From positions 124,001 through 188,000 of IMG/VR virus record IMGVR_UViG_3300036766_002289: a stretch of DNA of 64,000 nt; one strand, given 5' to 3'. The notes beneath the pieces were generated by a model. The model was given only the letters and a program-made list of their open reading frames with translations. It searched no databases and was not told the DNA's origin. The position numbers and the translations under genes were made by a program. Within the stretch, counting starts at the first letter, position 1, and every line of letters starts with the position of its first letter. Below are positions 1 through 18,083 of the stretch, piece by piece.

Positions 1-633
1 GCGTGACATTGAAAACCCTTCAGCAATAACTAATTGACTACTTGCACAACCCATAAATACTTTTGATTTTGCAATCCAGGCGGTAGTTTCCAAGAAGTCT
101 AATCCAGTTTTATCAATGCCTATATCCCCAACATAATCGCCTTTAGCCCCAATTTGTACTATGTTAACTTTACTTGGGCCATTATCTAAATCCTTAATTA
201 AAGGAGTCCAGAAATCTTCACCTCTTGGGGCAACAATGATATATTCTTTATCTAATGTAGCCATATCTTCATATTCATAATATACCTTTTGATTCATTGG
301 TATATCTAAACTTTTACATATATGATCGGGAATATACATTTGTGGCACTTCGCGTATCCCTGCTTGATAGACCGCTTCATATTCGTTTTCATTTGGAACT
401 GGTAAGTACCAGGGTTGGATGCCTAATCCCATATGATCCATTACATAGTCTTCGTTAATAAGAAATTGGTCAATACAGGATTGATATTCCATGAGTCTTT
501 TTAGGGGGCGACAATATTCGCTGGTCCAGAAGTCCGCAACTGCATTATGTTTTTTGCATAGCCAGCGTACAGCTGTTAGGCAATACAAAACGTCTCCCAT
601 TTTTCCTGGCATTGCTACTGCTATCTTGTTCAT
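1..633 (-). CDS. GT9-like glycosyltransferase, partial (runs off window start)
   Basis: Manual translation MNKIAVAMPGKMGDVLYCLTAV...FMGCASSQLVIAEG is open to position 1. The GxxGD motif and C-terminal FxGxxS motif resemble heptosyltransferase-like GT-B proteins. Confidence 0.6.
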   Translation of the reverse strand, partial: MNKIAVAMPGKMGDVLYCLTAVRWLCKKHNAVADFWTSEYCRPLKRLMEYQSCIDQFLINEDYVMDHMGLGIQPWYLPVPNENEYEAVYQAGIREVPQMYIPDHICKSLDIPMNQKVYYEYEDMATLDKEYIIVAPRGEDFWTPLIKDLDNGPSKVNIVQIGAKGDYVGDIGIDKTGLDFLETTAWIAKSKVFMGCASSQLVIAEGFSMSR

Positions 634-634
634 G
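605..634. repeat. 30-bp direct repeat, copy 1 (copy 2 at 1378-1407)
   Basis: CCTGGCATTGCTACTGCTATCTTGTTCATG is identical at both sites. Confidence 0.95.
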
Positions 635-654
635 CAGTTATTATAGAATAATGA

Positions 655-1287
655 CTAAATTTTTAAGATAAAAGAATCTTGATTATACACAACCCGCTCT
701 ATTGCTGCCCATTTAGGATTATTTTCATAGATAGTTTTGATTTCTTCAGTGGTGAAGTGGGCAAGTGGGTCTTTATTATAATTATTTAATGATGTTTTTG
801 TTTTAGTAAATTTAATAATTTGTTCATCAATAGAATAAAATTTGTTTACTAAATTTAAAAAATCGGATTGAATGTTTTCGCACCTTAACCAATAATCAAT
901 ATTGAAGTTAGCTACATAATAGTCGATCATCCAATCTCCTAAAGTAGAAAGAGTTTCTGGTTGATTCTGGACTGAATAAGGTGGTGGTAAATATAATTTG
1001 TAGTTTTTATCAAAATAAGCTGCCTTATCTGGGACCGTTGAAATACCACCAGTGAATAAATGATGATAAATAAAACTTAAAATAAAATTTGGTAGTCTTC
1101 TAATATTAAGAATAAGTTTTTTATCTTTAATTAGGTCTATTCTTTCCGAAAATGGAGCATGTTTGTTATTATCATCAGGGTCAGCAAATATAATTTTATC
1201 AGGAATGGAATTTATAAAAAATGCACTGGTTGCATCACCAGCAGTTTTGGGCATATGTCCCCATGAAAAATCATCTGTAACAATCAT
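655..1287 (-). CDS. Sulfotransferase-family-like protein
   Basis: N-terminal HMPKTAG resembles the PAPS-binding loop; RCENIQSDF resembles the RFENLxxDF motif. Confidence 0.5.
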   Translation of the reverse strand: MIVTDDFSWGHMPKTAGDATSAFFINSIPDKIIFADPDDNNKHAPFSERIDLIKDKKLILNIRRLPNFILSFIYHHLFTGGISTVPDKAAYFDKNYKLYLPPPYSVQNQPETLSTLGDWMIDYYVANFNIDYWLRCENIQSDFLNLVNKFYSIDEQIIKFTKTKTSLNNYNKDPLAHFTTEEIKTIYENNPKWAAIERVVYNQDSFILKI

Positions 1288-1377
1288 TGTATATATCTAT
1301 CTATAGCTGCGTTAGCTATATAATCAATCTATTTCTGGTCATGCTCAAGATTTTATATAACCATAACTCACTTTTTC

Positions 1378-1407
1378 CCTGGCATTGCTACTGCTATCTT
1401 GTTCATG
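1378..1407. repeat. 30-bp direct repeat, copy 2; encodes 12-codon stub MNKIAVAMPGKK* (1368-1406, minus strand)
   Basis: Identical to 605-634. Confidence 0.95.
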
Positions 1408-1439
1408 TAAATATTATAGAAAGTTGAATACATATTTTT

Positions 1440-2087
1440 ATGGAATATGTAACAGAAGGTGCCCCTGAGTATGCAATGACCTTATTTCCCCCAGGTTTTA
1501 AAGGTGTATGCGTCGATGTAGGTGCCTATGACTCTAAATGGATTAATAATACATGGATTTTTGAGAAAGCTGGCTGGGAGACGTATTGTATTGAACCTAA
1601 TCCCAAATGTATTCCAACCCTTAAAAAAGAAAGAAAAAATGTATTAGAATATGCTTGTGGTGCTGCCAATCAAGACGATGTTGATTTCTTTGTTTATACA
1701 GTTGAAACTGTAGGAGAAGCTGCTGGCAGTGGTTTAATTGACCACTGTGCTGGGCCTCAAGGCGAATATCACAAAACAATCTTCACTAGAAAAGAAAAAG
1801 TTAAAGTTAGAACTCTGGATTGGCTGATGGAAAATGAAATCAAGCAAGACCACGTTGACTATGTTTCTATTGACGTAGAAAGAAACGAAATGAATGTCTT
1901 AAGGGGGTTTGACCTTGCTAGATGGAAGGTTAATGTAGTTCTTATTGAGAATCTTGAGCATGACCAAGAACAGCGTGATTATATGGTTGAAGCTGGCTAT
2001 AGATACATCCATCGCATGACATTTAATGATTTCTATGTAACGCACGCCTTTTACGATAATATGAAAGACTATTATCAATTTCCGTAA
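1440..2087 (+). CDS. FkbM family methyltransferase
   Basis: VDVGAYD, IEPNP, VKVRTLD and SIDVE motifs. Confidence 0.85.
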   Translation: MEYVTEGAPEYAMTLFPPGFKGVCVDVGAYDSKWINNTWIFEKAGWETYCIEPNPKCIPTLKKERKNVLEYACGAANQDDVDFFVYTVETVGEAAGSGLIDHCAGPQGEYHKTIFTRKEKVKVRTLDWLMENEIKQDHVDYVSIDVERNEMNVLRGFDLARWKVNVVLIENLEHDQEQRDYMVEAGYRYIHRMTFNDFYVTHAFYDNMKDYYQFP

Positions 2088-2374
2088 GTCTTCATTGATA
2101 CTGAATCTAAACTAAAATTCAATAACTCGTCAATACTCTTGATGAGTTTGTTTCTTTTGGCGTTCAGGAGTTGGCAATCTTTACTGTATTTGGCTATTTC
2201 TTCATCGGTTCCGCCACCCATGATTTTTTCTTGAAGAAACCAGATTTTCATATTGACCGTGAAAATTTCGTCTACTAGTAAACCTGGAGTCTTGACACAT
2301 ATAGAATCCTGATACATATAGTCATATATTCTTTTAATGAAGAATCTGAATTGGTCTTTAATAAATTTAATCAT
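2075..2374 (-). CDS. DUF4254-like helical protein
   Basis: KIWFLQE...LNAKRNKLIKSIDELL pattern. Confidence 0.45.
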   Translation of the reverse strand: MIKFIKDQFRFFIKRIYDYMYQDSICVKTPGLLVDEIFTVNMKIWFLQEKIMGGGTDEEIAKYSKDCQLLNAKRNKLIKSIDELLNFSLDSVSMKTYGN

Positions 2375-4659
2375 ATAATTACAAATTTAGGACAAGGGAC
2401 TATGAATTTACCACCGTTCTTTAGGAAGTCTGCTTCTCTTGCTACAAATTCATTTATAAAGTGCCAAGGCAAGACAAGCAGATAATCTGGCTTAGCTTTT
2501 CTCATTTCTTCTTCGGAACAAATAGGAATATTGGTTCCTATTGTTTTGAGTCCAAATTTGGCAGGACTTCTCTCAGCAATACCATCTATTAAAGTGTTAT
2601 CTAATTTGAAATATTGGAGTAAGGTATTGCCTTTTGTACTTGCGCCATACCCCCACACAGTTTTACCTTTTGCTTTTTCTTGTTTTATAAAGCTTACAGT
2701 TTTATCTTTAAGGTCATTAATTTTGTTGAAAAAATCTTTCCATGTCTCTTCACAGTCTAGTTTAAGTGTTTTTTCATATTCTAGAATTGAGTTTACTCTA
2801 AAACTACAAACATCTCGATATGGTTGAGAAGAGAAATTCTTGGAAGTGGCAGAGTATTTCATGGCATAAACCCTGAATGAGCCACCATTTATGTCATTTA
2901 ACTGGCAATCCATGATTTTAAACCCATTCTTTTCAAGTAGGGTTTTTATGTTGAAGAGGGAATAATAATACAAATGCTCGTGGCAATTATGAACTATTGC
3001 ATTAGAAACGAGATAAGTATTGTCTTCGGTTTCAATGTTGTAAACTATTCCATCATAATGTTCGGTTTTGATTTTACTAATTGGGACGTAGGTGAAATTA
3101 TCGTCGGAATAATATCTTAAAGAGTCTCTTCTATTGTGATAAAAAGACGTGAAGATTTTATCTAGAACTTTATTTTTACCTCTTAATTGCCAAGAATCTT
3201 TTGAAATGACCTTCCCACCTCGTATTTCTCTTTCATAAGGTTTCACATAAGAAAATCCAGTCATTGCGTTTAGATTTGCGAGCATTAATTGAACTTGATA
3301 TATTAAAGTTTTGGAAGCAGAATGTAATCCTACCTGATTGTCGATATAACCATCGCCGTTAACTAGTCCATTTAAAAAAGGTATGGTTATATCTTGAGTT
3401 GCATTAAAGATAAAATCTGGTATTTTTTTATTCAATGCACCTTTGCCGAACCATTCTTCAAACACTCTTGCCAATGCAGTGCAGGATATTTGTACATCCA
3501 TTCCTTCAGATACTTTACTTTCATAAATTCTAGTTTTATAACCAATCTTTAAAAATACTTTTTTAAGCTTGTCTGCGTAATCTTTTTCATTTTTGTTTAA
3601 TGAGAAATTAATATGCAAATTAGTTGGTCTTCCATTTATGTATCCTTCAGCGACATATAACCCCATCATCCATAAGATTTCATTAGTTAGAGTTAAATTT
3701 TTAAGACCTCTTCTATAATTGGGACTATCTGTTTTGTTGTATTTGGATAAATCTATTTTTCTATTTGTTTCTTTTGCTTTTAATTTTGGCAGCAACAAAT
3801 AGTCACCAGTTTTAATATCTTTAGCATCGACCCATTTAGGTGTGCTGTGGATATCTTTTGTCGTTAAAATTGGATGTTCTGGAGTACATTCTATTTCTTC
3901 TAAATATAGAGCTTTTATTTTAATCATCTCCCCTTTGTAGGGTCTACTGAATTTTTTCATTACCTTAGTATAATCGCCGTTTTTACCAATTACTTCATCG
4001 CCCACATTAATTTCAGATATTGGTTTGTTGGCACCTGTGATAAAAGCATCAGGTTTAAAACATATGTTATCAAAAGCAGTTTGTTGGAGCATTAAAGGAG
4101 TATAGCTCATTTGCATGACCCATATACCTTCATCTTCTAAGATTTCCCATACATCTTGAATGAATTTATCTGGGTGTTCTAGGTCATAAAACATGGCTAT
4201 AGATGTAACAATTTTAGCTTTTAATTCACCGAACATTGACTTTTTGAATACTTCTGCACTGAAATAGTCTTGGATTATAATATTAGCATGGATTTTGGCT
4301 TCTTCCTTAAAAGTGTCATCGGCGGGGTCAATGCCCATCTTAAATATGCCTCTGGGCACAAAGCTAAGAAGGGTTCCATCGTTACTAGCAATGTCTATCC
4401 ACAGGTCGTCATTGTCTAGTTTAGAAATACTGCAAATTGAGTCCACAATGCCTTTAAGTTCGTTTCTCATTGTGGCATTTATACCAGACCTATACCAGTA
4501 TTTGCCATACATGGCATCGAGTGGTGCTGATTTATCTAATCTTACTGCCCCACTATCTTCCAACATTAGTTTCATTTCAACCTTATTTGTTTGCGGCTCA
4601 GCATCTTTTGCGATAAAATCAGAGATGTATAGTTCGCCCAAAGTAAATAATTCTTTCAT
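2371..4659 (-). CDS. NDP-sugar C-methyltransferase (NovU/TylC3-like), intein-containing
   Basis: DIASNDGTLL, FDNI/CHEHLYYYS, INGGSFR, GYGASTKGNTLL and LPWHF motifs. Confidence 0.9.
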   Translation of the reverse strand: MKELFTLGELYISDFIAKDAEPQTNKVEMKLMLEDSGAVRLDKSAPLDAMYGKYWYRSGINATMRNELKGIVDSICSISKLDNDDLWIDIASNDGTLLSFVPRGIFKMGIDPADDTFKEEAKIHANIIIQDYFSAEVFKKSMFGELKAKIVTSIAMFYDLEHPDKFIQDVWEILEDEGIWVMQMSYTPLMLQQTAFDNICFKPDAFITGANKPISEINVGDEVIGKNGDYTKVMKKFSRPYKGEMIKIKALYLEEIECTPEHPILTTKDIHSTPKWVDAKDIKTGDYLLLPKLKAKETNRKIDLSKYNKTDSPNYRRGLKNLTLTNEILWMMGLYVAEGYINGRPTNLHINFSLNKNEKDYADKLKKVFLKIGYKTRIYESKVSEGMDVQISCTALARVFEEWFGKGALNKKIPDFIFNATQDITIPFLNGLVNGDGYIDNQVGLHSASKTLIYQVQLMLANLNAMTGFSYVKPYEREIRGGKVISKDSWQLRGKNKVLDKIFTSFYHNRRDSLRYYSDDNFTYVPISKIKTEHYDGIVYNIETEDNTYLVSNAIVHNCHEHLYYYSLFNIKTLLEKNGFKIMDCQLNDINGGSFRVYAMKYSATSKNFSSQPYRDVCSFRVNSILEYEKTLKLDCEETWKDFFNKINDLKDKTVSFIKQEKAKGKTVWGYGASTKGNTLLQYFKLDNTLIDGIAERSPAKFGLKTIGTNIPICSEEEMRKAKPDYLLVLPWHFINEFVAREADFLKNGGKFIVPCPKFVII
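2986..4062 (-). mobile_element. Intein (359 aa) with LAGLIDADG homing endonuclease
   Basis: Starts CFKPDAFITG, has block B ECTPEHPIL, motifs MGLYVAEG and NGLVNGDG, ends IVHN, followed by extein Cys+1 (CHEH). Confidence 0.93.
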
Positions 4660-4708
4660 GTTTTACCTGTTCCAATTAATACTATAATAGTGTAAGGAAC
4701 TTGGATTT

Positions 4709-5542
4709 ATGAATTTGAAAACCAAAAAAATCACATGCAAACAGTGCCAAGTAATTTTTGAGTGTAAAGATAATAAAAAAAATGAAAATAGAGTGTGTTG
4801 TTCTCATCATTGTTCATCTGTTTTAAATGGTCTCAGCAATAAAGGCAAACAACGCACGAATGAATTTAAGAAAAGCCATTCAATAAGGTTCAGTGGAGTA
4901 AATAATCCTTTCTTTGGAAGGCAACATTCCATTGAGAGTAAGACTAGGATGAGTGAAAACAATAAATGGCATGATGAAGACTTTAACTATTGCGATTTGT
5001 CTGAATCACAGAAAGAGGTATTAGATGGCATAATGTTATCGGACGGTCACTTAGACGCATCTAATACGTCGGCCCGTATTACTTACGGAAGCAAGTTTAG
5101 GGAAACTTTAGAAGATATTAAAAGTGAATTTTCAAATCTGCATTTCAGTGAGCCTTGGAAATCAAAAGTAAATTGTTATCATTTTAAATCAGCGTATTAT
5201 AAAAACTTGTTAGAAGAACGGCACAGATGGTATCCAAATGATTATAAAATTGTGCCTTCTGACGTTCGGATTACTCCACTATCTTGTCAATGGTGGTTTA
5301 TGGGCGATGGTTATCAAGTTGATTATGGTGTCATGTTATGTACGGATGCTTTTAATGCAGAAAGCATTAAAATATTAGTGGAAAAATTAGATTTTGATTG
5401 TCACAGGACTATCAGTAATAGAATAAGAATCAATAGTCGATCCGCTACGAATTTTTTGAATTGGACTAGGGATGCTGCGACTATACCAAAGCAGTATTTA
5501 TACAAATGGGGTAATCACAGGAGGCAGAAACTTGTTAAATAA
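4709..5542 (+). CDS. Free-standing homing endonuclease (NUMOD3 + LAGLIDADG_2)
   Basis: NNPFFGRQHSIESK; VLDGIMLSDG and WWFMGDG. Confidence 0.85.
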   Translation: MNLKTKKITCKQCQVIFECKDNKKNENRVCCSHHCSSVLNGLSNKGKQRTNEFKKSHSIRFSGVNNPFFGRQHSIESKTRMSENNKWHDEDFNYCDLSESQKEVLDGIMLSDGHLDASNTSARITYGSKFRETLEDIKSEFSNLHFSEPWKSKVNCYHFKSAYYKNLLEERHRWYPNDYKIVPSDVRITPLSCQWWFMGDGYQVDYGVMLCTDAFNAESIKILVEKLDFDCHRTISNRIRINSRSATNFLNWTRDAATIPKQYLYKWGNHRRQKLVK

Positions 5543-6557
5543 AAAGATTGTTTTTTGCACAGGAATAAATGGCCAAGACGGAAGTTATTTGGCTGAAAGA
5601 CTGTTAGAAGATGGCTACAAGGTTCATGGTTTAATAAGGCGTAGTTCCTTGCCAAATACGGGACGAATAACACATATAATAGACAAAATTACATTAGAAA
5701 CTGGAGATATGACTGATTGTTCTAATTTAAGTAGGCTAATTCGTGCCCTTCAACCCACAGAAATTTACAATTTAGCTGCCCAAAGTGACGTTAAAACATC
5801 GTTCACAATGCAGGAATTCACTGCTCAAACTAACGCAGTTGGTGTCTTACATATTTTAGAGGCAGTTAAAAGTCATTCCCCACATACTCGGGTTTATCAA
5901 GCTTCTACTTCGGAATTGTACGGGGGGAAGAATGTCCCAATAACTGGATACAATGAAGATAGTCCATTTAGGCCAAGAAGTCCATATGCAGTAGCAAAGC
6001 TTTATGCATATTGGATGTGTCGAATGTATAGGGAGGCTTATGGGACTTTTGCCGCTAATGGGATTCTAATGAATCACGAAAGTCCCCGTCGTGGGGAGAA
6101 TTTCGTGACTAAAAAAATCACTTCATGGTGTGGGCGCTATAAAAAATCACTTCATGGCGGCGCAAATTGGCCAGGTGTTTTAGAGCTTGGTAACTTGGAG
6201 AGTTTCCGTGATTGGGGTCATGCCAAAGATTATATTGAAGCAATGATTCTTATCAATAGGCATTCTGAACCTGATGATTGGGTCGTTGCCACGGGTGAAA
6301 CCCATAGTATCCGTGAATTTGTGCAGAATTGTTTTGATTGGATGAATATCAAACTAGAATGGCAAGGAAGTGGCTTAGGCGAAGTTGGCTTAGTGGATGG
6401 GAAGAAAGTAATTGCCATTAGCGAAGAATTCTTTCGGCCATCTGAAGTGGATAGATTATTAGGCGATAGTAGTAAGATTCGTAGCAAACTCGGTTGGAAG
6501 CCTAAATTTAGTTTCAGTGATTTGATTGATGACATGATGACTTATGAGGTGAATTAA
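5532..6557 (+). CDS. gmd: GDP-mannose 4,6-dehydratase
   Basis: TGINGQDGSYLAE, YNLAAQS, QASTSELYG, SPYAVAKLY, RDWGHAKDY. A TTG start at 5532 follows AGGAGG. Confidence 0.95.
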   Translation: MLNKKIVFCTGINGQDGSYLAERLLEDGYKVHGLIRRSSLPNTGRITHIIDKITLETGDMTDCSNLSRLIRALQPTEIYNLAAQSDVKTSFTMQEFTAQTNAVGVLHILEAVKSHSPHTRVYQASTSELYGGKNVPITGYNEDSPFRPRSPYAVAKLYAYWMCRMYREAYGTFAANGILMNHESPRRGENFVTKKITSWCGRYKKSLHGGANWPGVLELGNLESFRDWGHAKDYIEAMILINRHSEPDDWVVATGETHSIREFVQNCFDWMNIKLEWQGSGLGEVGLVDGKKVIAISEEFFRPSEVDRLLGDSSKIRSKLGWKPKFSFSDLIDDMMTYEVN

Positions 6558-11601: not shown

Positions 11602-11607
11602 TATTTT

Positions 11608-12438: not shown

Positions 12439-13368
12439 ATGTCAAACAAAAAAATTCTTGTAACAGGTGGTAGTGGGTTAGTAGGATGTGCTTTTCGCAG
12501 GAGCATTCCACATGCAATTTTTATTTCTTCTAAAGATGTTGACTTAAGGGATGAATCACAAACAATGAATTGCTTTAAATATGTTAAGCCTGATTATGTT
12601 ATTCACCTTGCTGGTAAAGTAGGCGGTGTTGCTTCTAATTATAATTACACAGGAACTTTTTTTACAGACAATATTCGTATTAATACCAATGTTTTAGATG
12701 CTTGCAAAAATTATAATGTAGAAAAAGTAGTTTCTTTTTTAAGCACTTGTATCTATCCAGATAAAGCAAACTACCCTCTAATAGAAAATCAGATACATAA
12801 TGGCGAACCGCATTTTACCAATTTTGGTTATGCGTATGCCAAAAGGATGCTCCATATCCAAAGCATGGCATATCGTCGTCAGTATGGATGTAATTTTGTG
12901 TGTGTTGTACCAAATAATCTCTATGGGGAAAATGATAATTTTGATCTACAAAACGCACATGTAATACCTGCTTTAATTCGTAAGATTTATCAAGCTAAAA
13001 TAAGCAATAATTCATTAGATGTTTGGGGAGATGGAGAAGTTTATCGAGAATTTACTTATGTGAATGATATAGTTAAAATTGTCAATTCATTATTAGCTTC
13101 ATCTTATGCTGAAGACATGCCGTTAAATATTGGCAACCCAACAGAAATTTTGCTTAATGATGTAATTAAAAAGTTATGTGAAATCATGGAGTTCTGTGGT
13201 GAAATTAAATACGATATTACCAAGCCAAAAGGACAATTGAGAAAACCTACATCAAATGCATGTTTGCTGAAACTGATGAACGTAGAGTACACAACTTTGC
13301 AAGAAGGACTCAAAAAAACTTGTGATTGGTTTGTTGAAAATTATCCTAATGTAAGAGGCGTGAAATGA
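12439..13368 (+). CDS. fcl: GDP-L-fucose synthase
   Basis: TGGSGLVG, HLAGKVGG, LSTCIYP, YAYAKR, PNNLYG, HVIPALIRK. Confidence 0.95.
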   Translation: MSNKKILVTGGSGLVGCAFRRSIPHAIFISSKDVDLRDESQTMNCFKYVKPDYVIHLAGKVGGVASNYNYTGTFFTDNIRINTNVLDACKNYNVEKVVSFLSTCIYPDKANYPLIENQIHNGEPHFTNFGYAYAKRMLHIQSMAYRRQYGCNFVCVVPNNLYGENDNFDLQNAHVIPALIRKIYQAKISNNSLDVWGDGEVYREFTYVNDIVKIVNSLLASSYAEDMPLNIGNPTEILLNDVIKKLCEIMEFCGEIKYDITKPKGQLRKPTSNACLLKLMNVEYTTLQEGLKKTCDWFVENYPNVRGVK

Positions 13369-13988
13369 GTGAAATATGGAGTGTTTTACATTCATTATTA
13401 AATGAGCCAAAAATAATTGTTGAGATAGGGGCGGCGGATGGTTTAGACACAATAAAACTCCTTAATGTTTTTAAAAATGCACATATTTATGTTTTTGAGC
13501 CAGACCCTAGAAACATTGAAAAATTCAAGAACAATTTAACATCATTGCGTGTGTCTTTTGCGGGAAAAGCAATAAGTAATTATAATGGATTTGGCAAGAT
13601 GTATTTATCGGGTACAGCGGAAAATGCGGATGGCTGGACATATTCTTCTTCTTTGAAAAAACCAAATTTACACTTAGTCATGGCTCCTTGGTGTGTGTTT
13701 AATAAGCAAACCAGAGTAGAAGTTGTGACTTTAGACAGTGCATTAAATCACCTTGAGAGTGAAATAGATTTTATTTGGGCTGACGTTCAAGGGAGTGAAG
13801 GGGAAATAATTGCTGGTGGTCAACAAATTTTAAATAAAACCAGATATTTCTACACTGAATATTATAATGACCAAATTTATGAAGGGCAAATAAATATAGA
13901 CCAAATACAGAAATTACTGCCTGGAACATGGGAGGTTGTTAGCAGGTGGGGGTGTGATGTTCTCTTCAAGAACAAAAGTTTACCTTAA
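13365..13988 (+). CDS. FkbM family methyltransferase
   Basis: EIGAADG, FEPDPRN, IWADVQGSE. Confidence 0.88.
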   Translation: MSEIWSVLHSLLNEPKIIVEIGAADGLDTIKLLNVFKNAHIYVFEPDPRNIEKFKNNLTSLRVSFAGKAISNYNGFGKMYLSGTAENADGWTYSSSLKKPNLHLVMAPWCVFNKQTRVEVVTLDSALNHLESEIDFIWADVQGSEGEIIAGGQQILNKTRYFYTEYYNDQIYEGQINIDQIQKLLPGTWEVVSRWGCDVLFKNKSLP

Positions 13989-14510
13989 TTTAGCAACCAA
14001 AACATCAGTGGATGAAAGACTAGATGGCATAAAAGTAAATCTATAATTTTGGTGTATTTCCAATATTTTTTTAGTAATGTCCTGCAAAGGCGGAATCCAC
14101 TCAGTCCCAGCTAATCTTATATCATCAATTAATATTATGTTGTTTTTAATATCATGGGCTTTTATAGCTTCTAATTCTTCCAATAAGGGGCTGCTTTTTT
14201 TCCCTTTTGCGGTATTACCCCCAGAATAATGTCCATCTAGCCAAAATAAAATTTTTTTGTTTATAGTTTTTAATAGTTGTGGAAGAACCTCAGAAGAATC
14301 TCCAAAATGAACATGAATATTTGGATTTCCAAGAAATTTTTCTTTAGAAAAATCATACCAATCTTTACTTAACTCGATAGTGTGTAATTCTTTAAAGTTA
14401 AATAAACTTGCCAATGAGGTTGTATGACCCGCCTCTGTTCCTGTCTCTACAAAAATATCACAGTCTTCTTTATTTTGGCGGATTATTTCAAACATGTCAA
14501 TATATCGCAT
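13980..14510 (-). CDS. SAM-dependent methyltransferase-like protein
   Basis: FVETGT, TIELS, GDS, FWLDGH, ILIDD. Confidence 0.7.
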   Translation of the reverse strand: MRYIDMFEIIRQNKEDCDIFVETGTEAGHTTSLASLFNFKELHTIELSKDWYDFSKEKFLGNPNIHVHFGDSSEVLPQLLKTINKKILFWLDGHYSGGNTAKGKKSSPLLEELEAIKAHDIKNNIILIDDIRLAGTEWIPPLQDITKKILEIHQNYRFTFMPSSLSSTDVLVAKLR

Positions 14511-14574: not shown

Positions 14575-15363
14575 CTAACTAGGAACTTGTAATGCACATA
14601 ATCTCTTATAAATATTACTTAATTGAAAATCTTCTACGGCATTAAGTATTCCATCATATTGATTAAAAACTCCTGTGTTGTATACAGGCAAATTATTGGA
14701 CGCCCCTCTTTTGATTTTGGCAAGATAATCATTAAAACTTCTGTTCATATAATGATTAATATGAGCTTTAGTGCAAGAGAATGGGGAGAATGGTCCATTT
14801 ATTGCATACCCCAATTCATTAACACAGTATTTGCCATTAATGTAATTGAAAGAATGTCCCTCACGGGCATTGACTACATGATCCAACCTAACTATTGATT
14901 TAATATGTTTATTGACCTCCAGGGATTGCTCCCCCCTTCTAGTAAATGCATGTATTTGTGATCCGCTTTGATTTTCTATTAAATTGTTCGAGCCAAAACC
15001 CAACCAATTTAGTCCTAAACCTCCATAATTTACATAGTTGGCTAATAATTCATCCAAATAGTTATGGCACACATCATTTACAACTATAAATTCGTCGCTG
15101 TCTATAAATGCTGCCCAAGTTACACTGTATCGAAATTTGTTTATAAAATCATCGTATGCGATCATATGTTTGTGCGGCGATGTACTTTCAAACCTAAACA
15201 CCTGAACTTGTCGCATGTCACCCAATAAATATTTTATGTGCGGCGTACTGTTGTTGTCGTAAATGTAAATCATGTCTACGCCGATGAGTAGATGGTAATT
15301 TATCCATTCTTTCAGATAATCTTCCCTTTCGTCTTTTATAATTGAGCAAATAGCTAGATTCAT
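14575..15363 (-). CDS. GT92/GT2-family glycosyltransferase
   Basis: CSIIKDE, EWINYH, IYDNNS, FIDSDEF, KSIVR. Start refined to ATG 15363. Confidence 0.8.
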   Translation of the reverse strand: MNLAICSIIKDEREDYLKEWINYHLLIGVDMIYIYDNNSTPHIKYLLGDMRQVQVFRFESTSPHKHMIAYDDFINKFRYSVTWAAFIDSDEFIVVNDVCHNYLDELLANYVNYGGLGLNWLGFGSNNLIENQSGSQIHAFTRRGEQSLEVNKHIKSIVRLDHVVNAREGHSFNYINGKYCVNELGYAINGPFSPFSCTKAHINHYMNRSFNDYLAKIKRGASNNLPVYNTGVFNQYDGILNAVEDFQLSNIYKRLCALQVPS

Positions 15364-15405
15364 AGCTAAATATCTATGTAATAGTAAGAATTTTTGGGGA
15401 ATAAA

Positions 15406-15951
15406 ATGCCAATACTTGAAAGAATAAACTTGAATAAAGAAGAGATTGAGGAAATTGAAAAAAAAATAAGTTATGAAAGACATGTGGAGCGATATTGTAT
15501 GATTCGGCAGTGGTGCAGAGGAAGAATTTTGGACTATGGGTGTGGGTGTGGCTATGGCTCTTATTTGGTTTCGAAGAACCCAGATGTTAAGTTCATCCAG
15601 GGGTATGACATTAATTTAGAAGCAATTGAATGGGCTAATAAAAATTTCAGTAACGATAAAACAGAGTATGTGTCGTCAATAGAAATTAAAGATTTTGACA
15701 TGTTGCTAGCAATAGAGGTCATAGAACACATAAAAGATAAATCAATTTTACCCGACATCGCTAGTAAAACAAATATAAAAGAAATTATTATTTCTTATCC
15801 ATCAAAAAAAACCACACATTACAATAAATTTCATTATTATGATTACAATACTCAAGAAATTGTTGATTTATTCAATGGTTTTAAATTGTTGAAAGAAATA
15901 AATTTTTATGAAGAATCTCACTTATTGATATTTACAAAGGACTTTATTTAA
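15406..15951 (+). CDS. Class I SAM-dependent methyltransferase
   Basis: ILDYGCGCGYG, GYDIN, EVIEHI. Confidence 0.8.
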   Translation: MPILERINLNKEEIEEIEKKISYERHVERYCMIRQWCRGRILDYGCGCGYGSYLVSKNPDVKFIQGYDINLEAIEWANKNFSNDKTEYVSSIEIKDFDMLLAIEVIEHIKDKSILPDIASKTNIKEIIISYPSKKTTHYNKFHYYDYNTQEIVDLFNGFKLLKEINFYEESHLLIFTKDFI

Positions 15952-16685
15952 TGATTACTGTAATTGATTTGGAAAAATACAGGCTTGGGAACGCATTGTT
16001 TAAGGTAGCGGCGGCATATGCTTTAGCTTTAAGAAACAATGACATTTTTTTGCTGCCAGAATGGAGATATTCTAAGTTTTTCAAAAAAATGCCAGCATAT
16101 CAAGGTGAGACAATTAGCAGCATTTATCATCAGCAAGAGTATCATTACAAGCCTATACCTTATACCCCAAATATGGCAATTTGCATTAAAGATGCTGGAT
16201 ATTTTCAATCAGAAAATTATTTTAGTGATTATGCCAGCGAGGTGCGGGATTTCCTCACCCCTAAATGTGAAAAAGAATTTCCTTTTTTTGATAGCATCAC
16301 ATGCTCGATTCATGTGCGACGAGGAGATTATGTTCAGTTGCAAAATTTCATGCCATTGGTAACAATGGACTATTACAATTTTTGTGTTGCGTTTACGTCT
16401 TTTAAAGAAATTAAGTTCATTGTTTTTTCAGATGATATAGATTGGTGTAAAAAGCATTTTGATAACAATTTCATTTTTGTCGAAGGCAATAGTGATATTG
16501 AAGATTTGTGTTGGATGAGTCAATGTACGCATAATATAATTGCAAACTCTAGTTTTTCATGGTGGGGGGCTTGGCTAAATAGCAATCCTAATAAAGCTGT
16601 ATACGCACCTGCTGTTTGGGTAGGCCCAGGACATAGGGGACTAGATACTAGGGACTTAATTCCAGCTAAGTGGCTAAAAATTTAA
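15951..16685 (+). CDS. GT11 alpha-1,2-fucosyltransferase
   Basis: RLGNALF, GYFQS, IHVRRGDY, FSDD, NSSFSWWGAWL. Confidence 0.92.
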   Translation: MITVIDLEKYRLGNALFKVAAAYALALRNNDIFLLPEWRYSKFFKKMPAYQGETISSIYHQQEYHYKPIPYTPNMAICIKDAGYFQSENYFSDYASEVRDFLTPKCEKEFPFFDSITCSIHVRRGDYVQLQNFMPLVTMDYYNFCVAFTSFKEIKFIVFSDDIDWCKKHFDNNFIFVEGNSDIEDLCWMSQCTHNIIANSSFSWWGAWLNSNPNKAVYAPAVWVGPGHRGLDTRDLIPAKWLKI

Positions 16686-16690
16686 ATTAT

Positions 16691-17464
16691 TTATTTCTCT
16701 AATATCAATAGACCATTGCACAAATCTGTACTAAACACAATCTTACATTTATTTGTTGCCATATATTCATCAATTGCTAGTTTAATTCCTTCTGCCGAAT
16801 TTTCCTCACAGGGAGTAGCACATGTGAAGGTGTCATGAAAAACCAGATACTTTTTGGACTTCGCAGCGTGAATTTCTAATTCATTTTTAACTTGTTCATA
16901 GGAGTGGTGACTATCAAAAAAGATTAAGTCTGTGGTGTTTATTATAAGTTCTTTATCAGCCGTATTATGTTGGTGGAACTCCCATTTCATTAGATTTTTA
17001 CTTTTAAGCCATACTATGAAAGGAGTTTCTTCTATATCATAGCTTTCTAGTTTGCCATCGGCTGGCAAACCATATAAGAAGGCAATTGTGCTTTGTCCGT
17101 GTCGTACACCGAACTCAGTAATGTGCTTACATTGGGATGCGTAGTATTCGAGTACGGGGAAATGTGACACCATATTACTTCTTAAATAAAATGGTAAACT
17201 GCCTACAGTTTCTTCTTTCATTACTATGGTGAGATCATCTGGCACAGTATGATAATAATGTTGTCTTACCTGATCTAAACTTAGTTGGTCGAATTTGAGG
17301 CAGGCATCTCGTCTTTGTCTGGTTTTATTAAATCTGCCTGAACCTTTTTCATTGATGCCATGTTGAAAATAATGGTCGTATGCGTCAACTCCAACTTTCG
17401 CCACATCTTCATTAGCTTTGTAATAATACTCGCTATCGAACAAATTTCTAGGTAAGTTTTCCAT
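16691..17464 (-). CDS. Methyltransferase (Methyltransf_24-like) with N-terminal NPDV-like module
   Basis: TEFGVRHGQST, FFDSHH, VFHDT. Confidence 0.7.
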   Translation of the reverse strand: MENLPRNLFDSEYYYKANEDVAKVGVDAYDHYFQHGINEKGSGRFNKTRQRRDACLKFDQLSLDQVRQHYYHTVPDDLTIVMKEETVGSLPFYLRSNMVSHFPVLEYYASQCKHITEFGVRHGQSTIAFLYGLPADGKLESYDIEETPFIVWLKSKNLMKWEFHQHNTADKELIINTTDLIFFDSHHSYEQVKNELEIHAAKSKKYLVFHDTFTCATPCEENSAEGIKLAIDEYMATNKCKIVFSTDLCNGLLILEK

Positions 17465-17468
17465 AAAG

Positions 17469-18083
17469 TTATAATAGTGAAATTTCTTTAAAATATTGAT
17501 TTTTAATCAATTTAATCTTATCTGGCGCATGAAAATTGTGAATCCCATGATACCCCAATGTGCCTAATCTGAAATATTTTTCACAACAAAAACGCGAAGC
17601 TTCTTCTCTTGGTGCAACTTTAGCTCCAACACTTCCCATTCTATGATGAAAATAGATATCTTCTGACTCGCCATTGTGCCTATGTTTACTTATAACGTCT
17701 AGCGTTTTTGACCTGGACCTTATGGACAAACCACCGTTATAATGTCCCGCAGATGGACCACCAATCCAGTCCCATTGCATAAATTCTTCAATCCCATGCC
17801 TTAATAACATGCTATCGTGTTGAAAAATCAATATTTTTTCATGTGGAATTTGATTCCAGAAACTTGCAGAAGCCAATAAACCACTGTATGAATGTCTATC
17901 TAGATTTCTATGAAGACTTATCTTTGTAGCTCGTAAGTCCTTAAATATTGAAGCGTTAAGATGGTGAAATATGTACAGTTCCCAGCCACTGCCCAGCTTT
18001 TTCATGTGCTTCTCTATGGTCGTTTTTAAATCTGGCAAGTGACGAGTTTCAACTATTACTGCTGCATGTGAATTTCTCAGCAT
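17469..18083 (-). CDS. DUF5672-like glycosyltransferase-related protein
   Basis: IVETR, LIFQHDS, WDWIG, NGGLSIRS, EDIYF, GYH. Confidence 0.7.
   Translation of the reverse strand: MLRNSHAAVIVETRHLPDLKTTIEKHMKKLGSGWELYIFHHLNASIFKDLRATKISLHRNLDRHSYSGLLASASFWNQIPHEKILIFQHDSMLLRHGIEEFMQWDWIGGPSAGHYNGGLSIRSRSKTLDVISKHRHNGESEDIYFHHRMGSVGAKVAPREEASRFCCEKYFRLGTLGYHGIHNFHAPDKIKLIKNQYFKEISLL

What the first reader, a model, noticed from the sequence alone, without database searches (positions are those of the whole stretch)
1..18083. 18-kb glycan synthesis and decoration island in a phage
Seen: gmd + fcl + GT11 form a complete GDP-L-fucose and fucosyl-transfer route. There are also GT9, GT2, GT92-like, two RgpF-like, DUF5672, a sulfotransferase-like protein, a sugar C-methyltransferase and at least six other methyltransferases, with mixed orientation. 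Inference: virion glycosylation (a glycan shield as in giant viruses) or host-surface remodelling with methylated, fucosylated sugars.
Basis: partly seen in the sequence, partly recalled or inferred. Interest (0 to 1): 0.6.

Follow-up and report, generated by a model that had tools for sequence, protein, structure and literature searches.

The report
Mosaic sugar-decoration island in huge phage
An 18-kb block of 21 genes in a very large sediment phage is a real sugar-building island that probably makes fucose and a rare branched methyl-sugar to coat a phage or host surface; such islands are known from cyanophages and giant viruses, but this one is bigger, mosaic and holds a mobile intein.

Summary
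Window -65..18083 carries 21 tightly packed ORFs (98% coding). Eighteen are glycan enzymes: GMD, an Fcl-like synthase, a sugar 3-C-methyltransferase, six other methyltransferases, nine glycosyltransferase-type domains and a sulfotransferase-like protein. The record is a tailed phage with major head, portal and baseplate genes. It is a 390-kb cut of a 590-kb sediment contig, and its sister is the 595-kb uncultured phage LR756511.1.

- The left half is a conserved cassette: GMD, 3-C-methyltransferase, small ORF, a Pfam-less GT-B family (one single and one tandem-double gene), and methyltransferases. It recurs in 38 viral contigs, some labelled giant-virus MAGs, and beside the C-methyltransferase in 69 of 80 bacterial or archaeal loci. 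It predicts a GDP-linked C-branched 6-deoxyhexose (virenose/evalose-like) besides GDP-fucose.
- The C-methyltransferase is split in its catalytic motif by an intact 359-aa LAGLIDADG intein. A related phage in another metagenome has the exact empty site.
- The right half is shared, dispersed, with the sister phage.

No membrane, export or lipid-carrier gene was found. Whether the glycan goes on virion proteins (my preference, about 0.45) or on host envelope glycans (about 0.33) is unresolved. The kind is already known from cyanophage "LPS" clusters and chloroviruses, so this is a new variant.

The parts
1..633 (-). Short GT9-like GT-B glycosyltransferase (232 aa). The ORF runs to 66 nt left of the window (L001:1435-2133).
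   Evidence: No Pfam or NCBIfam hit. Atlas structure TM 0.73-0.78 to GT9-bearing clusters. Homologues of 36-44% lie next to the cassette in L066, L017, L019 and L026.
655..1287 (-). Sulfotransferase-like protein (210 aa).
   Evidence: No Pfam hit. Atlas feature score 0.95-0.97 and structure TM 0.67-0.74 to mostly viral Sulfotransfer_2 clusters. Only 8 homologues in the word search.
594..1437 (.). 71-nt direct repeats (594-664 and 1367-1437, 83% identical) that bracket the sulfotransferase-like gene. The second copy is a remnant of the GT9-like gene's 5' end.
   Evidence: family D2. By my reading of the repeat sequences printed (not run through translate), the second copy keeps the GT9-like gene's upstream region and its first 12 codons, then a stop.
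1440..2087 (+). FkbM-family methyltransferase 1, a cassette member.
   Evidence: Pfam PF05050, 1.9e-20. 56-62% identical copies lie in the viral cassettes.
2075..2374 (-). Small cassette ORF (99 aa; called as 80 aa by JGI), weakly DUF4254-like, function unknown.
   Evidence: Pfam 18 bits, below cut-off. Conserved between the C-methyltransferase and GTB1 genes in many viral loci. JGI gene call.
2371..4659 (-). NDP-hexose 3-C-methyltransferase (TylC3/TcaB9 type) interrupted by an intein.
   Evidence: Methyltransf_14, 1.4e-45. An intein-less homologue matches D-mycarose 3-C-methyltransferase 4rv9 at 9e-38, and also TcaB9 and KijD1. Exteins are 50-61% identical to L036:8117-9358.
2986..4062 (-). 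359-aa intein (Cys200..Asn558, +1 Cys559) with a LAGLIDADG endonuclease, inserted at FDNI|CHEH.
   Evidence: Pfam Intein_splicing 5.7e-16 and LAGLIDADG_3. Motif positions. An exact 1077-nt empty site occurs in a contig of run X3.
4709..5542 (+). Free-standing LAGLIDADG_2 + NUMOD3 homing endonuclease between the inverted C-methyltransferase block and GMD.
   Evidence: Pfam. Two paralogues elsewhere in the genome.
5472..6557 (+). GDP-mannose 4,6-dehydratase. The true start may lie about 60-80 nt downstream.
   Evidence: PF16363, 7.2e-116. 54-56% identical to cyanophage GMDs. N-terminus examined.
6557..7480 (+). GTB1: a GT-B fold glycosyltransferase of a family without a Pfam model.
   Evidence: No Pfam, NCBIfam or PDB sequence hit. 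AF2 pLDDT 94. Foldseek hits SenB, TreT, TarM, HepE, PimB' and ManT at E 1e-9 to 1e-7. 259+ homologues.
7481..9445 (+). GTB2x2: a tandem double module of the same GT-B family (654 aa).
   Evidence: BLASTP to GTB1 gives 2e-23 and 1e-22 for the two halves. Internal DNA repeats are spaced 933-936 nt.
9423..10052 (+). Class I SAM methyltransferase (Methyltransf_11), a cassette member.
   Evidence: Pfam. 35-50% identical copies follow GTB2x2 in the viral cassettes.
10033..10713 (-). GT-A fold (GT2-like) glycosyltransferase with an invariant H-D-D-x-S.
   Evidence: NCBIfam TIGR04440, 5e-4. AF2 pLDDT 91. Foldseek TarP 6.6e-8, SpsA and the WrtF fucosyltransferase. Invariant residues.
10750..11601 (+). 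Protein like the C-terminal half of RgpF.
   Evidence: PF05045 positions 272-503, 6.9e-7. Adjacent homologue pair in LR756511.1.
11608..12438 (+). Protein like the N-terminal half of RgpF.
   Evidence: PF05045 positions 24-199, 1.1e-14. 41% identical to the LR756511.1 copy.
12439..13368 (+). Fcl-like GDP-4-keto-6-deoxymannose 3,5-epimerase/4-reductase.
   Evidence: NCBIfam GDPFucSynFcl, 1.4e-71, full length but below the equivalog cut-off. 67% identical to the LR756511.1 copy.
13365..13988 (+). FkbM-family methyltransferase 2.
   Evidence: PF05050, 1.8e-15.
13980..14510 (-). Methyltransf_24-type methyltransferase (weak match).
   Evidence: PF13578, 4.4e-4, below cut-off.
14575..15483 (-). GT92 / GT2_4 (GT-A) glycosyltransferase. 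The likely true start is Met41, at 15363.
   Evidence: PF01697 1.4e-15 and PF13704 4.7e-14. The relative aligns only from residue 27-42 onward. Met positions.
15394..15951 (+). Small class I methyltransferase, paired with GT92 as in the sister phage.
   Evidence: Pfam. 62% identical and adjacent to GT92 in LR756511.1.
15951..16685 (+). GT11-family (alpha-1,2-fucosyltransferase-type) enzyme.
   Evidence: PF01531, 7.7e-24. HVRRGDY and SSFSWWGAWL motifs.
16691..17464 (-). Methyltransf_24 / CmcI-like (rhamnosyl O-methyltransferase-like) methyltransferase.
   Evidence: PF13578 7.9e-7 and PF04989 1e-3.
17469..18083 (-). DUF5672 protein, function unknown. It is the last gene of the island.
   Evidence: PF18922, 3.6e-23. 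56% identical copy in LR756511.1.
18186..18259 (+). tRNA-Met that marks the right border. It is followed by HNH and LAGLIDADG endonuclease genes.

Best explanation
Window -65..18083 is a genuine, mosaic glycan-biosynthesis island of a lytic-type, T4-related huge phage from freshwater sediment. The source contig is about 590 kb.

Proposed mechanism:
1. Phage GMD takes host GDP-mannose and converts it to GDP-4-keto-6-deoxymannose.
2. The Fcl-like enzyme turns part of this into GDP-L-fucose.
3. The intein-bearing 3-C-methyltransferase, once spliced, methylates C-3 of the keto-sugar. Reduction by Fcl or another SDR then gives a GDP-linked C-branched 6-deoxyhexose (virenose/evalose type).
4. Nine soluble glycosyltransferase-type domains assemble a hetero-oligosaccharide in the cytoplasm of the infected cell. 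These are three modules of a Pfam-less GT-B family genetically tied to the C-methyltransferase, a GT9-like protein, two GT-A proteins, two RgpF-like proteins and a GT11 fucosyltransferase.
5. Six further methyltransferases and a sulfotransferase-like protein decorate the product.

The most likely acceptor is a phage protein of the virion, such as fibres or capsid, giving a glycan coat as in chloroviruses and some mycobacteriophages.

Shown: gene content, folds, cassette conservation, phage identity and intein polymorphism. Inferred: the sugar products, the order of steps, expression, and above all the acceptor.
For: Gene and fold assignments.

Phage hallmarks. The T4-type major head protein is 87% identical to that of the 595-kb phage LR756511.1.

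Cassette linkage:
- The C-methyltransferase lies beside GTB1 in 29 of 38 viral loci and 69 of 80 cellular loci.
- GMD, C-methyltransferase and Fcl are consecutive genes in Synechococcus phage DSL-LC02.
- The route GMD, then NDP-hexose 3-C-methyltransferase, then GMER has been proposed for L-virenose (PMC3539893).

Cytoplasmic, self-contained chemistry without export parts:
- No island protein has a transmembrane-grade hydrophobic segment.
- No ORF in the 390 kb has more than 5 such segments, so there is no Wzx-, Wzy- or WaaL-like protein.
- The single 5-segment candidate in the window is an M50 protease.

No integrase was found, so lysogenic conversion is unlikely.

The island abuts a block of tail-fibre-like or virion-structural genes (phrog_892, phrog_32822, phrog_38058).

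GTB1 of this phage sits in a supported clade (SH-aLRT 98) of 14 viral contigs plus one 5-kb MAG contig, apart from the cellular clade. Another clade holds contigs labelled giant-virus MAGs.

Precedent: PBCV-1 encodes GMD, GMER, a fucosyltransferase domain and methyltransferases for its capsid glycans and relies on host GDP-mannose (PMC9614988).

Selection on the pathway: the intein is intact (Cys1, TPEH, two LAGLIDADG motifs, HN, +1 Cys) and in frame, and all 21 ORFs are open.
Against: - No expression or protein data exist. Only DNA runs from sediment and freshwater hold the sequence.
- The major head protein has no Ser/Thr-rich tail of the kind glycosylated in mycobacteriophages, and nothing marks an acceptor.
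- In bacteria the homologous cassette sits in surface-glycan loci with membrane proteins (Acyl_transf_3, YfhO-like). Host carriers and exporters could therefore be co-opted.
- The literature reads similar cyanophage clusters as host-surface modification (PMC1079782; PMC7824862).
- The negative searches cover only 390 of about 590 kb.
- Fcl scores below NCBIfam's equivalog cut-off. The C-methyltransferase lacks a detectable N-terminal zinc domain (compared).
- The tree is a quick, unfinished search.
Confidence: 0.45

Rival explanations
1. Host-envelope remodelling. The soluble phage enzymes act on the host's own lipid-linked or surface glycans (O-antigen, capsule, S-layer or wall polysaccharide), using host carriers, flippases and ligases. 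The surface becomes fucosylated, methylated or branched. That would block superinfection by rival phages or stop progeny being lost on debris.
For: - This is the standard reading of the closest known systems: the 24 'LPS' genes of P-SSM2 (PMC1079782) and the jumbo-phage 'capsular polysaccharide modification systems' (PMC7824862).
- The cellular homologues of the cassette lie in surface-glycan loci with GT2, GT4, Acyl_transf_3 and YfhO-like genes.
- GT9-, RgpF- and GT11-type enzymes classically act on LPS or wall glycans (established knowledge).
- Most O-antigen glycosyltransferases are also soluble or peripheral, so the lack of membrane proteins does not exclude this reading.
Against: - No initiating phosphoglycosyltransferase, flippase, polymerase, ligase or transporter was found in the island or in the 390 kb.
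- No integrase was found, so a long-lived converted host is not expected.
- A 21-gene pathway building a new branched sugar is a large investment for a short lytic cycle.
- The viral copies form old virus-specific clades rather than recent host captures.
Confidence: 0.33
2. A soluble or non-protein product. The island would make a free methylated oligo- or polysaccharide, or glycosylate a small molecule or lipid inside the infected cell, by analogy with mycobacterial methylmannose polysaccharides or natural-product deoxysugars.
For: - The structural neighbours of GTB1 include the methylmannose-polysaccharide mannosyltransferase 7qsg and small-molecule glycosyltransferases (SenB, tetrahydrobiopterin glucosyltransferase).
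- The high methyltransferase-to-glycosyltransferase ratio resembles methylated polysaccharide systems.
- C-3 methyl deoxysugars are best known from antibiotic pathways (TylC3, TcaB9, KijD1).
Against: - No aglycone, polyketide or lipid-synthesis genes lie nearby.
- Fold neighbours at 8-12% identity do not indicate the substrate.
- In bacteria the cassette sits with envelope-glycan genes.
Confidence: 0.1
3. DNA hypermodification. The glycosyltransferases and methyltransferases would decorate hydroxymethyl-pyrimidines in phage DNA to evade restriction.
For: - Phage glycosyltransferases that add diverse glycans to DNA are known (Pyle et al., bioRxiv 10.1101/2023.12.21.572611, listed).
- T4 alpha-glucosyltransferase 1y6f appears among the fold hits of GTB1.
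- The phage is T4-related.
Against: - No thymidylate-synthase-family hydroxymethylase was found in the 390 kb. The Tet/JBP search was uninformative because its control did not ring.
- The GDP-fucose and C-methyl-deoxyhexose pathways, GT11, RgpF-like and sulfotransferase-like proteins are glycan enzymes, not DNA-modification enzymes.
- The same cassette lies in cellular surface-glycan loci.
Confidence: 0.04
4. Artefact. The island would be bacterial DNA joined to a phage by misassembly, or host flank of a prophage, as the 'provirus' label might suggest.
For: IMG/VR classes the record as a provirus. Homologous cassettes exist in bacterial chromosomes.
Against: - The island lies 124 kb inside the record, between tail-fibre-like genes and typical phage genes and homing endonucleases.
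- A single 35-kb contig of the source run spans the laid stretch 2001-8000 without differences.
- Half of the island's genes have 41-67% identical homologues in the sister phage LR756511.1.
- A related phage contig in another study keeps the C-methyltransferase to GTB1 arrangement.
- GTB1 groups with viral copies, not bacterial ones.
- The source contig is 590 kb, the size of the sister phage.
Confidence: 0.02

Closest known systems
Glycan ('LPS') gene clusters of T4-like cyanophages and other jumbo phages (P-SSM2, S-SCSM1, S-SKS1; Sullivan 2005, PMC1079782; PMC9602691; Iyer et al. 2021, PMC7824862)
   Same: Large lytic myoviruses with a T4-type head carry clusters of 13-24 genes: GMD, GDP-fucose synthase, alpha-1,2-fucosyltransferase, several glycosyltransferase families and O-methyltransferases. 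The GMD here is 54-56% identical to theirs. The clusters vary between related phages.
   Different: - The host and habitat differ: a sediment huge phage of about 590 kb, not a marine cyanophage.
- This island adds the C-methyltransferase / Pfam-less GT-B cassette, a sulfotransferase-like gene, an intein and a homing endonuclease.
- It has no sugar kinase or nucleotidyltransferase.
- The function of the known clusters is itself untested.
Synechococcus phage DSL-LC02 (metagenome-assembled, OR032571; PMC10611076) 10.5-kb cluster
   Same: The gene order is GMD, C-methyltransferase (36% identical), GDP-fucose synthase, GT, GT4 (24% identical to GTB1), FkbM, then more glycosyltransferases. This is the same pathway logic in a GenBank phage.
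   Different: It is annotated only generically ('methyltransferase domain-containing protein'). It has no intein, no double GT-B gene, and no GT11, RgpF-like or sulfotransferase-like genes. It is a 168-kb Kyanoviridae genome.
Chlorovirus PBCV-1 capsid-glycan machinery (Chem Rev 2022, PMC9614988)
   Same: The virus encodes GMD (A118R), GMER (A295L), a fucosyltransferase domain, multi-domain glycosyltransferases and sugar O-methyltransferases (A064R-D3, A061L). It depends on host GDP-mannose and works in the cytoplasm. Its glycans end up on the major capsid protein.
   Different: It is a eukaryotic giant virus. C-branched sugars and sulfotransferases are not mentioned in that review (0 occurrences). 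Attachment to the virion is proven there and only inferred here.
Mycobacteriophage virion glycosylation (Freeman et al. 2023, cited in PMC12619734)
   Same: Phage-encoded glycosyltransferases, with methyltransferases, put glycans on capsid and tail-tube subunits.
   Different: Only two or three genes are involved and there is no nucleotide-sugar synthesis. The acceptors are C-terminal tails, which the major head protein here lacks.
NDP-hexose 3-C-methyltransferases (TylC3-type 4rv9, TcaB9, KijD1) and the proposed GDP-route to virenose in Coxiella (PMC3539893)
   Same: The enzyme shares the Methyltransf_14 C-terminal domain and the FD.I(Y/C)HEH motif. Its genomic partners GMD and Fcl match the proposed route GMD, then C-methyltransferase, then GMER.
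   Different: The known enzymes use dTDP-sugars in antibiotic pathways. The phage and viral subfamily shows no Methyltransf_13 zinc domain in Pfam (compared). The nucleotide and stereochemistry of the product are unknown.
Inteins with LAGLIDADG homing endonucleases in phage genes
   Same: It has the canonical Cys1 / TxxH / HN / +1 Cys architecture and is inserted in a catalytic motif. It is 25-28% identical to inteins in the DNA polymerase gene of Lactococcus phage 949 and to similar elements in unannotated (hypothetical) genes of Erwinia jumbo phages.
   Different: The host gene is a sugar-modifying enzyme rather than a replication, repair or packaging protein. From memory, a few archaeal sugar-metabolism inteins exist, so this is rare rather than unprecedented.

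Membership tests
GDP-L-fucose de novo pathway (Gmd + Fcl/GMER) | A GDP-mannose 4,6-dehydratase family member | tested here: met
   PF16363, 387.7 bits against a cut-off of 27, full length.
GDP-L-fucose de novo pathway (Gmd + Fcl/GMER) | A GDP-L-fucose synthase equivalog | tested here: inconclusive
   The best NCBIfam model is GDPFucSynFcl, aligned over 3-302 of 308 positions at 1.4e-71, but with 241 bits against an equivalog cut-off of 500.
GDP-L-fucose de novo pathway (Gmd + Fcl/GMER) | A source of GDP-mannose | tested here: not met
   No NTP_transferase (ManC-type) gene in the 390-kb record. The phage must rely on the host, or the gene lies in the unseen 200 kb.
GT11 alpha-1,2-fucosyltransferases | Family profile match and the HxRRxD GDP-fucose motif | tested here: met
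   PF01531, 84.9 bits against a cut-off of 23.9, covering only profile positions 128-268. HVRRGDY is present. That this motif is diagnostic is from memory.
GT9 (heptosyltransferase family) | Match to the GT9 sequence profile | tested here: not met
   No PF01075 hit even at E 5. There is only structural likeness (TM 0.73-0.78) to clusters in which some members carry GT9. I therefore call it GT9-like, not GT9.
GT2 / GT-A glycosyltransferases | GT-A fold with an acidic DxD-type motif | tested here: met
   AF2 pLDDT 91. Foldseek TarP, SpsA and GnT-I at 1e-7. Invariant H37-D38-D39-x-S41. No Pfam GT2 profile hit, so the support is at fold level only.
GT-B (GT4-like) glycosyltransferases | Two Rossmann-like domains with structural similarity to solved GT-B enzymes | tested here: met
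   AF2 pLDDT 94, pTM 0.90. At least 500 Foldseek matches at E <= 0.001, and all of those listed are GT-B enzymes. No Pfam, NCBIfam or PDB sequence match, so this is a separate sequence family.
NDP-hexose 3-C-methyltransferases (TylC3/TcaB9) | C-terminal Methyltransf_14 domain, class I methyltransferase core, and the (Y/C)HEH catalytic motif | tested here: met
   The intein-less homologue aligns end to end with 4rv9 at 9e-38. The motif is restored across the splice junction as FDNI-CHEH.
NDP-hexose 3-C-methyltransferases (TylC3/TcaB9) | N-terminal zinc-binding domain (Methyltransf_13) | tested here: not met
   Absent from the Pfam hits of the phage protein, and no Cys in the first 60 residues. 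It is present in the Ferruginibacter homologue.
Inteins (class 1, with homing endonuclease) | Cys/Ser1, block B TxxH, terminal HN, +1 Cys/Ser/Thr, in-frame insertion in a conserved host motif, and LAGLIDADG motifs | tested here: met
   C200, TPEH at 259-262, LAGLIDADG motifs at 333-340 and 432-438, H557-N558, C559. Pfam Intein_splicing and LAGLIDADG_3.
Inteins (class 1, with homing endonuclease) | Presence/absence polymorphism with a precise empty site | tested here: met
   A contig of run X3 skips 1082 nt and has 5 nt in their place. The net loss is 1077 nt, which equals 359 codons.
Inteins (class 1, with homing endonuclease) | Protein splicing activity | not testable with these tools
   This needs expression and a splicing assay.
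Sulfotransferases | Profile match and PAPS-binding 5'-PSB / 3'-PB motifs | tested here: inconclusive
   No Pfam hit. Atlas leads to Sulfotransfer_2 clusters. A PKTAGD loop is visible, but I did not align it to a solved sulfotransferase.
Complete surface-polysaccharide pathway (Wzx/Wzy or ABC type) | Initiating phosphoglycosyltransferase, flippase or transporter, and polymerase or ligase (polytopic membrane proteins) | tested here: not met
   The hydropathy scan found none in the island and no ORF with more than 5 hydrophobic segments in the 390 kb. The scan is crude, and 200 kb of the source contig was not examined.
Virus-encoded virion glycosylation (chlorovirus or mycobacteriophage type) | Glycan covalently attached to a virion protein | not testable with these tools
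   This needs virions. The gene-level parallels are listed under Closest known systems.
Phage DNA glycosylation systems | A hydroxymethyl-pyrimidine-generating enzyme together with a DNA glycosyltransferase | tested here: not met
   PF00303 is absent. The PF12851 search was uninformative because the control did not ring. Only 390 of 590 kb was searched.
Tailed phage (Caudoviricetes), T4-type head | Major head, portal, baseplate and terminase genes on the same molecule | tested here: met
   phrog_138 1.5e-84, phrog_213 1.4e-78, phrog_219 2e-30. Terminase_6N fragments. 2,601 phage records match the head protein.

The most novel reading that the evidence does not exclude
The left half of the island would be the phage copy of a so-far undescribed pathway. 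It consists of GMD, a zinc-domain-less sugar 3-C-methyltransferase, a new GT-B family (single and tandem-double forms), a small DUF4254-like protein and methyltransferases. It spans bacteria, archaea, phages and giant-virus MAGs, makes a GDP-linked C-branched 6-deoxyhexose and installs it on glycans. In this huge phage the product, further fucosylated, O-methylated and perhaps sulfated, would coat virion fibres or capsid. That would be the first branched-chain sugar and the most elaborate self-encoded glycan coat reported for a bacteriophage. A mobile intein polices the key enzyme.
Probability: 0.3. Interest if true: 0.72.

Novelty: new variant of a known kind. Interest (0 to 1): 0.48.

Why it matters
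Large glycan clusters in lytic phages have been known since 2005, but their products and targets have never been determined.

This island sharpens the question in three ways:
- It separates a lineage-inherited fucosylation toolkit from a horizontally circulating cassette.
- It ties a Pfam-less glycosyltransferase family to a sugar C-methyltransferase across more than 100 viral and cellular loci.
- It predicts a concrete, testable product: a GDP-3-C-methyl-6-deoxyhexose.

If the glycan sits on virions, huge phages would join chloroviruses, mimiviruses and some mycobacteriophages as viruses that build their own glycan coat. That bears on adsorption, on survival in sediment and on recognition by grazers or immune systems.

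The cassette also offers new enzymes for making rare branched sugars. The intein gives a natural presence/absence system in a metabolic gene.

Tried and rejected
- **Expression timing.** The T4 late-promoter motif TATAAATA is not enriched: 16 and 21 sites against about 30 and 27 expected. The sigma-70 and terminator scans equal the shuffles. No inference on timing is possible.
- **RNA evidence.** No RNA run holds the stretch.
- **Alternative genetic code.** A tRNA with anticodon CTA and a rise in ORF cover when TAG is read through suggested TAG recoding. Read-through of TAA or TGA raises cover as much. Single TAGs bridging long frames are only mildly enriched at 240-330 kb, 14 of 35. The island and the structural genes read cleanly in code 11, so I used no other code.
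- **Acceptor clues.** There is no Ser/Thr-rich tail on the major head protein. The neighbouring fibre-like proteins are 19-24% Ser+Thr, which is not diagnostic.
- **Pfam capsid, portal and sheath models** (PF05065, PF04860, PF04984) found nothing, whereas PHROGs did. I therefore give little weight to the other single-family negatives.
- **Sequence searches for GTB1 against PDB** gave only noise, with a single sequence or with a profile. Structure prediction was needed.
- **The intein in other loci.** It has no counterpart inside the C-methyltransferase genes of the 118 other loci.
- **Unused tools.** Complex prediction and the large representative search were not used. I make no binding claim, and the word search had already found the families.
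- **First paper search.** The search on huge phages, glycosyltransferase and fucose returned only unrelated glycobiology.

Full report
**Where the window lies.** The window is bases 124001-188000 of a 390,039-bp IMG/VR virus record labelled 'provirus', CheckV 98%. One island protein is on record from a 590,099-bp JGI contig of a sediment sample. The 390-kb record is therefore a cut of a larger molecule.

PHROGs identify a major head protein (1.5e-84), a portal (1.4e-78), a baseplate wedge and a tail protein at 339-382 kb. Terminase fragments are present. No tyrosine integrase was found. The head protein is of the T4 type. It is 87% identical to that of the 595-kb uncultured phage LR756511.1, and about 30-35% identical to those of Microcystis, Xanthomonas jumbo and cyanomyoviruses. 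The rest of the window holds ordinary big-phage cargo: many HNH and LAGLIDADG endonucleases, PRPP synthetase, ADP-ribosylglycohydrolases, ParB-like and polymerase-like proteins. This is a huge tailed phage, not a bacterial chromosome.

**The observation.** From 66 nt left of the window to 18083 there are 21 ORFs covering 98% of the DNA. Profile searches confirm:
- GMD, an Fcl-like SDR, GT11 and GT92/GT2_4.
- Two RgpF-like genes, each matching a different half of the RgpF profile, with the C-half gene first.
- DUF5672.
- A sugar C-methyltransferase and six further methyltransferases.

Five ORFs had no Pfam hit even at E 5.
- Two of them, 6557-7480 and 7481-9445, are paralogues. The second is a tandem double of the first (DNA repeats 933-936 nt apart). 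With 25 homologues, AlphaFold gave pLDDT 94. Foldseek returned only GT-B glycosyltransferases: SenB, TreT, TarM, HepE, PimB', WaaG and ManT.
- ORF 10033-10713 folds (pLDDT 91) as a GT-A enzyme like TarP and SpsA, with an invariant H-D-D-x-S.

GT11 has the HVRRGDY motif.

The tally is nine glycosyltransferase-type domains in eight genes, seven methyltransferases, two SDR sugar-nucleotide enzymes, one sulfotransferase-like protein, one homing endonuclease and two unknowns. Outside the island, the 390 kb contains only one paralogue of any island enzyme: a GT-A at genome 14.0-14.8 kb, next to another SDR.

**A conserved cassette.** I searched IMG/VR with the GT-B family and found 38 loci. tblastn with all island proteins shows a recurrent gene string: GMD, C-methyltransferase, small ORF (orf99), GTB1, GTB2x2, Methyltransf_11, with or without FkbM and a GT9-like gene. 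The C-methyltransferase is present in 29 of the 38 loci. Five loci carry giant-virus MAG labels.

In one-per-species prokaryote genomes the family is widespread: Chitinophagaceae, Pyrinomonadaceae, cyanobacteria, Planctomycetota, Methanomicrobiales and others. GTB1 lies beside the C-methyltransferase in 69 of 80 loci, with FkbM in 40 and a GMD-like SDR in 71. In Ferruginibacter the neighbours are an Acyl_transf_3 protein, an SDR, GMD, GT2, GT4 and a YfhO-like membrane protein, which is a surface-glycan locus.

A quick ML tree places the phage GTB1 in a clade (SH-aLRT 98) of 14 viral contigs plus one 5-kb MAG contig. This clade is separate from the cellular clade and from the clade holding the giant-virus-labelled contigs. 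The viral/cellular label changes 5 times, against 34 in shuffles. The careful search did not finish and the root is not established.

In the window, the C-methyltransferase/orf99 segment is inverted relative to the usual order, and a LAGLIDADG/NUMOD3 endonuclease gene sits at the inversion joint.

**What the cassette should make.** The C-methyltransferase is homologous along its length to D-mycarose 3-C-methyltransferase (9e-38), TcaB9 and KijD1. Those enzymes methylate C-3 of NDP-4-keto-6-deoxyhexoses (established knowledge). GMD makes exactly such a keto-sugar from GDP-mannose. GMD, C-methyltransferase and Fcl are consecutive genes in Synechococcus phage DSL-LC02. The same three-enzyme route was proposed for L-virenose (PMC3539893).

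I therefore infer two branches from one intermediate: GDP-L-fucose, used by GT11, and a GDP-3-C-methyl-6-deoxyhexose, used by the GT-B family that is genetically tied to the methyltransferase. The phage subfamily lacks the N-terminal zinc domain seen in the bacterial homologue. No ManC-type gene is present, so host GDP-mannose is needed, as in PBCV-1.

**The intein.** The 762-aa C-methyltransferase ORF contains a 359-aa insertion (Cys200 to Asn558) with Intein_splicing and LAGLIDADG_3 domains. It has the full set of splicing blocks: Cys1, TPEH, two LAGLIDADG motifs, His-Asn and +1 Cys. It interrupts FDNI|CHEH, the counterpart of the YHEH motif of TylC3 and TcaB9.

Laying contigs of four public runs on 2001-8000 showed the following. 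In a sediment metagenome of another study (coded X3), a 5.2-kb contig that is 86-89% identical continues from 2983 to 4066 with 5 substituted letters. The net deletion is 1077 nt, which is exactly the intein. The contig then carries 1925 other letters in place of 4671-6556, and resumes in GTB1.

None of the other 118 C-methyltransferase loci has this intein. The 735-kb phage LR756501 has an intein-less copy at 67% identity. The intein is therefore a recent, mobile invader of an otherwise conserved active site.

**Mosaic structure.** The sister phage LR756511.1 has the following dispersed over 45-125 kb and near 294 kb:
- DUF5672 (56%).
- The RgpF pair (27% and 41%, adjacent and in the same order).
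- Methyltransferase + GT92 (62% and 57%, adjacent) and a second GT92.
- GT11 (28%), GMD (47%) and Fcl (67%).

It has none of the C-methyltransferase, orf99, GTB1, GTB2x2, Methyltransf_11, GT9-like, sulfotransferase-like or GT-A genes. The right half of the island is thus a lineage toolkit, and the left half is an acquired cassette.

A 71-nt direct repeat brackets the sulfotransferase-like gene. Its second copy is a 12-codon stump of the GT9-like gene with its upstream region. This points to insertion by recombination at a duplicated 5' end.

**Function.** No island protein has a membrane-spanning segment. The hydrophobic N-terminus of the GT92 ORF precedes the conserved Met41 start. The 390 kb has no polytopic membrane protein beyond an M50 protease and a tape-measure-sized protein. 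The chemistry is therefore cytoplasmic and has no export apparatus of its own.

Immediately upstream lies a 40-kb block with tail-fibre and virion-structural PHROG matches. These facts, the lack of an integrase, the virus-specific clades and the chlorovirus precedent make virion-protein glycosylation my preferred acceptor model, at 0.45.

The main rival, at 0.33, is modification of host envelope glycans through host carriers. That is how similar cyanophage clusters have been read, and it is where the cellular homologues work.

DNA glycosylation is unlikely: no hydroxymethylase was found, and the enzymes are of glycan type. Assembly artefact is very unlikely.

All negatives are limited to 390 of about 590 kb. 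There is no expression evidence.

**Novelty.** Phage clusters with GMD, Fcl, fucosyltransferases, many glycosyltransferases and methyltransferases are already described (PMC1079782, PMC9602691, PMC7824862). 89 GenBank phage records carry a GMD homologue. The finding is therefore a new, unusually large and mosaic variant of a known kind.

What seems new:
- The C-branched-sugar cassette with its unclassified GT-B family, spanning viruses and cells.
- Its presence in huge phages.
- The polymorphic intein in a sugar C-methyltransferase.

No paper in the searchable library links sugar C-methyltransferases with phages.

Noticed in passing
window 46512-46586 (+): tRNA with anticodon CTA (amber suppressor; ARAGORN calls it tRNA-Pyl). 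ORF cover at genome 240-330 kb is low in code 11 (0.41-0.49). TAG read-through does not rescue it more than TAA or TGA read-through does, and bridging TAGs are only mildly enriched.
   Followed up: partly
whole record; L147 (JGI 3300036766, Ga0373622_0000005): The 390-kb 'provirus' record is a cut of a 590,099-bp contig, close to the 595 kb of the sister phage LR756511.1. The provirus boundary is probably a trimming artefact, and about 200 kb of the phage was not visible to me.
   Followed up: partly
window 594-664 and 1367-1437: A 71-nt direct repeat (83% identical) brackets the sulfotransferase-like gene. The second copy keeps the upstream region and first 12 codons of the GT9-like gene, then a stop. 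This looks like a scar of modular gene insertion.
   Followed up: partly
window 4709-5542, 18296-18940, 18944-19915, 51435-52490, 55273-56328, 57286-58227; L004:6726-7811: The density of free-standing homing endonucleases (LAGLIDADG_2 with NUMOD3, HTH or AP2 domains; HNH; Endo VII-like) is very high. One sits exactly at the joint where the C-methyltransferase block is inverted relative to other cassettes.
   Followed up: partly
genome 6867-7148 and 9719-9838 (L006, L008); 368575-368967 (L007): Terminase_6N matches come in separate pieces about 2.6 kb apart, plus a second weak locus. The large terminase may be split by an intron, intein or endonuclease insertion.
   Followed up: no
genome 14000-14773 and 15714-16733 (L050): A second mini glyco-locus: a 40% identical paralogue of the island's GT-A protein and another NAD-dependent epimerase/dehydratase. 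A sigma-70-family factor lies nearby at 11801-12283.
   Followed up: partly
window 42747-43730 and 62416-63309; 29132-30106; 20454-20975; 21194-22096; 19919-20404: Two ADP-ribosylglycohydrolase paralogues, a PRPP synthetase, a phosphoribosyltransferase-like protein, an RlaP RNA-repair nucleotidyltransferase and a CAP/SCP-domain protein. This suggests NAD/ADP-ribose and RNA-repair conflict modules downstream of the island.
   Followed up: no
window 32916-33788 (+): A five-segment membrane protein of the M50 (site-2 protease) family. It is the only multi-pass membrane protein in the window.
   Followed up: partly
window 11446-11486 and 11647-11687: A 41-nt repeat encodes the same FNE..YL..NPDV peptide at the end of the RgpF-C-like gene and near the start of the RgpF-N-like gene. 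It may be a shared short module of unknown role.
   Followed up: no
L004:12954-14837 (genome 116954-118837): A 627-aa NHL / beta-propeller protein (Vgb_lyase-like repeats) with a tail-fibre-like N-terminus. It and two following ORFs share phrog_19068. These are possible receptor-binding or glycan-binding fibre parts just upstream of the island.
   Followed up: partly
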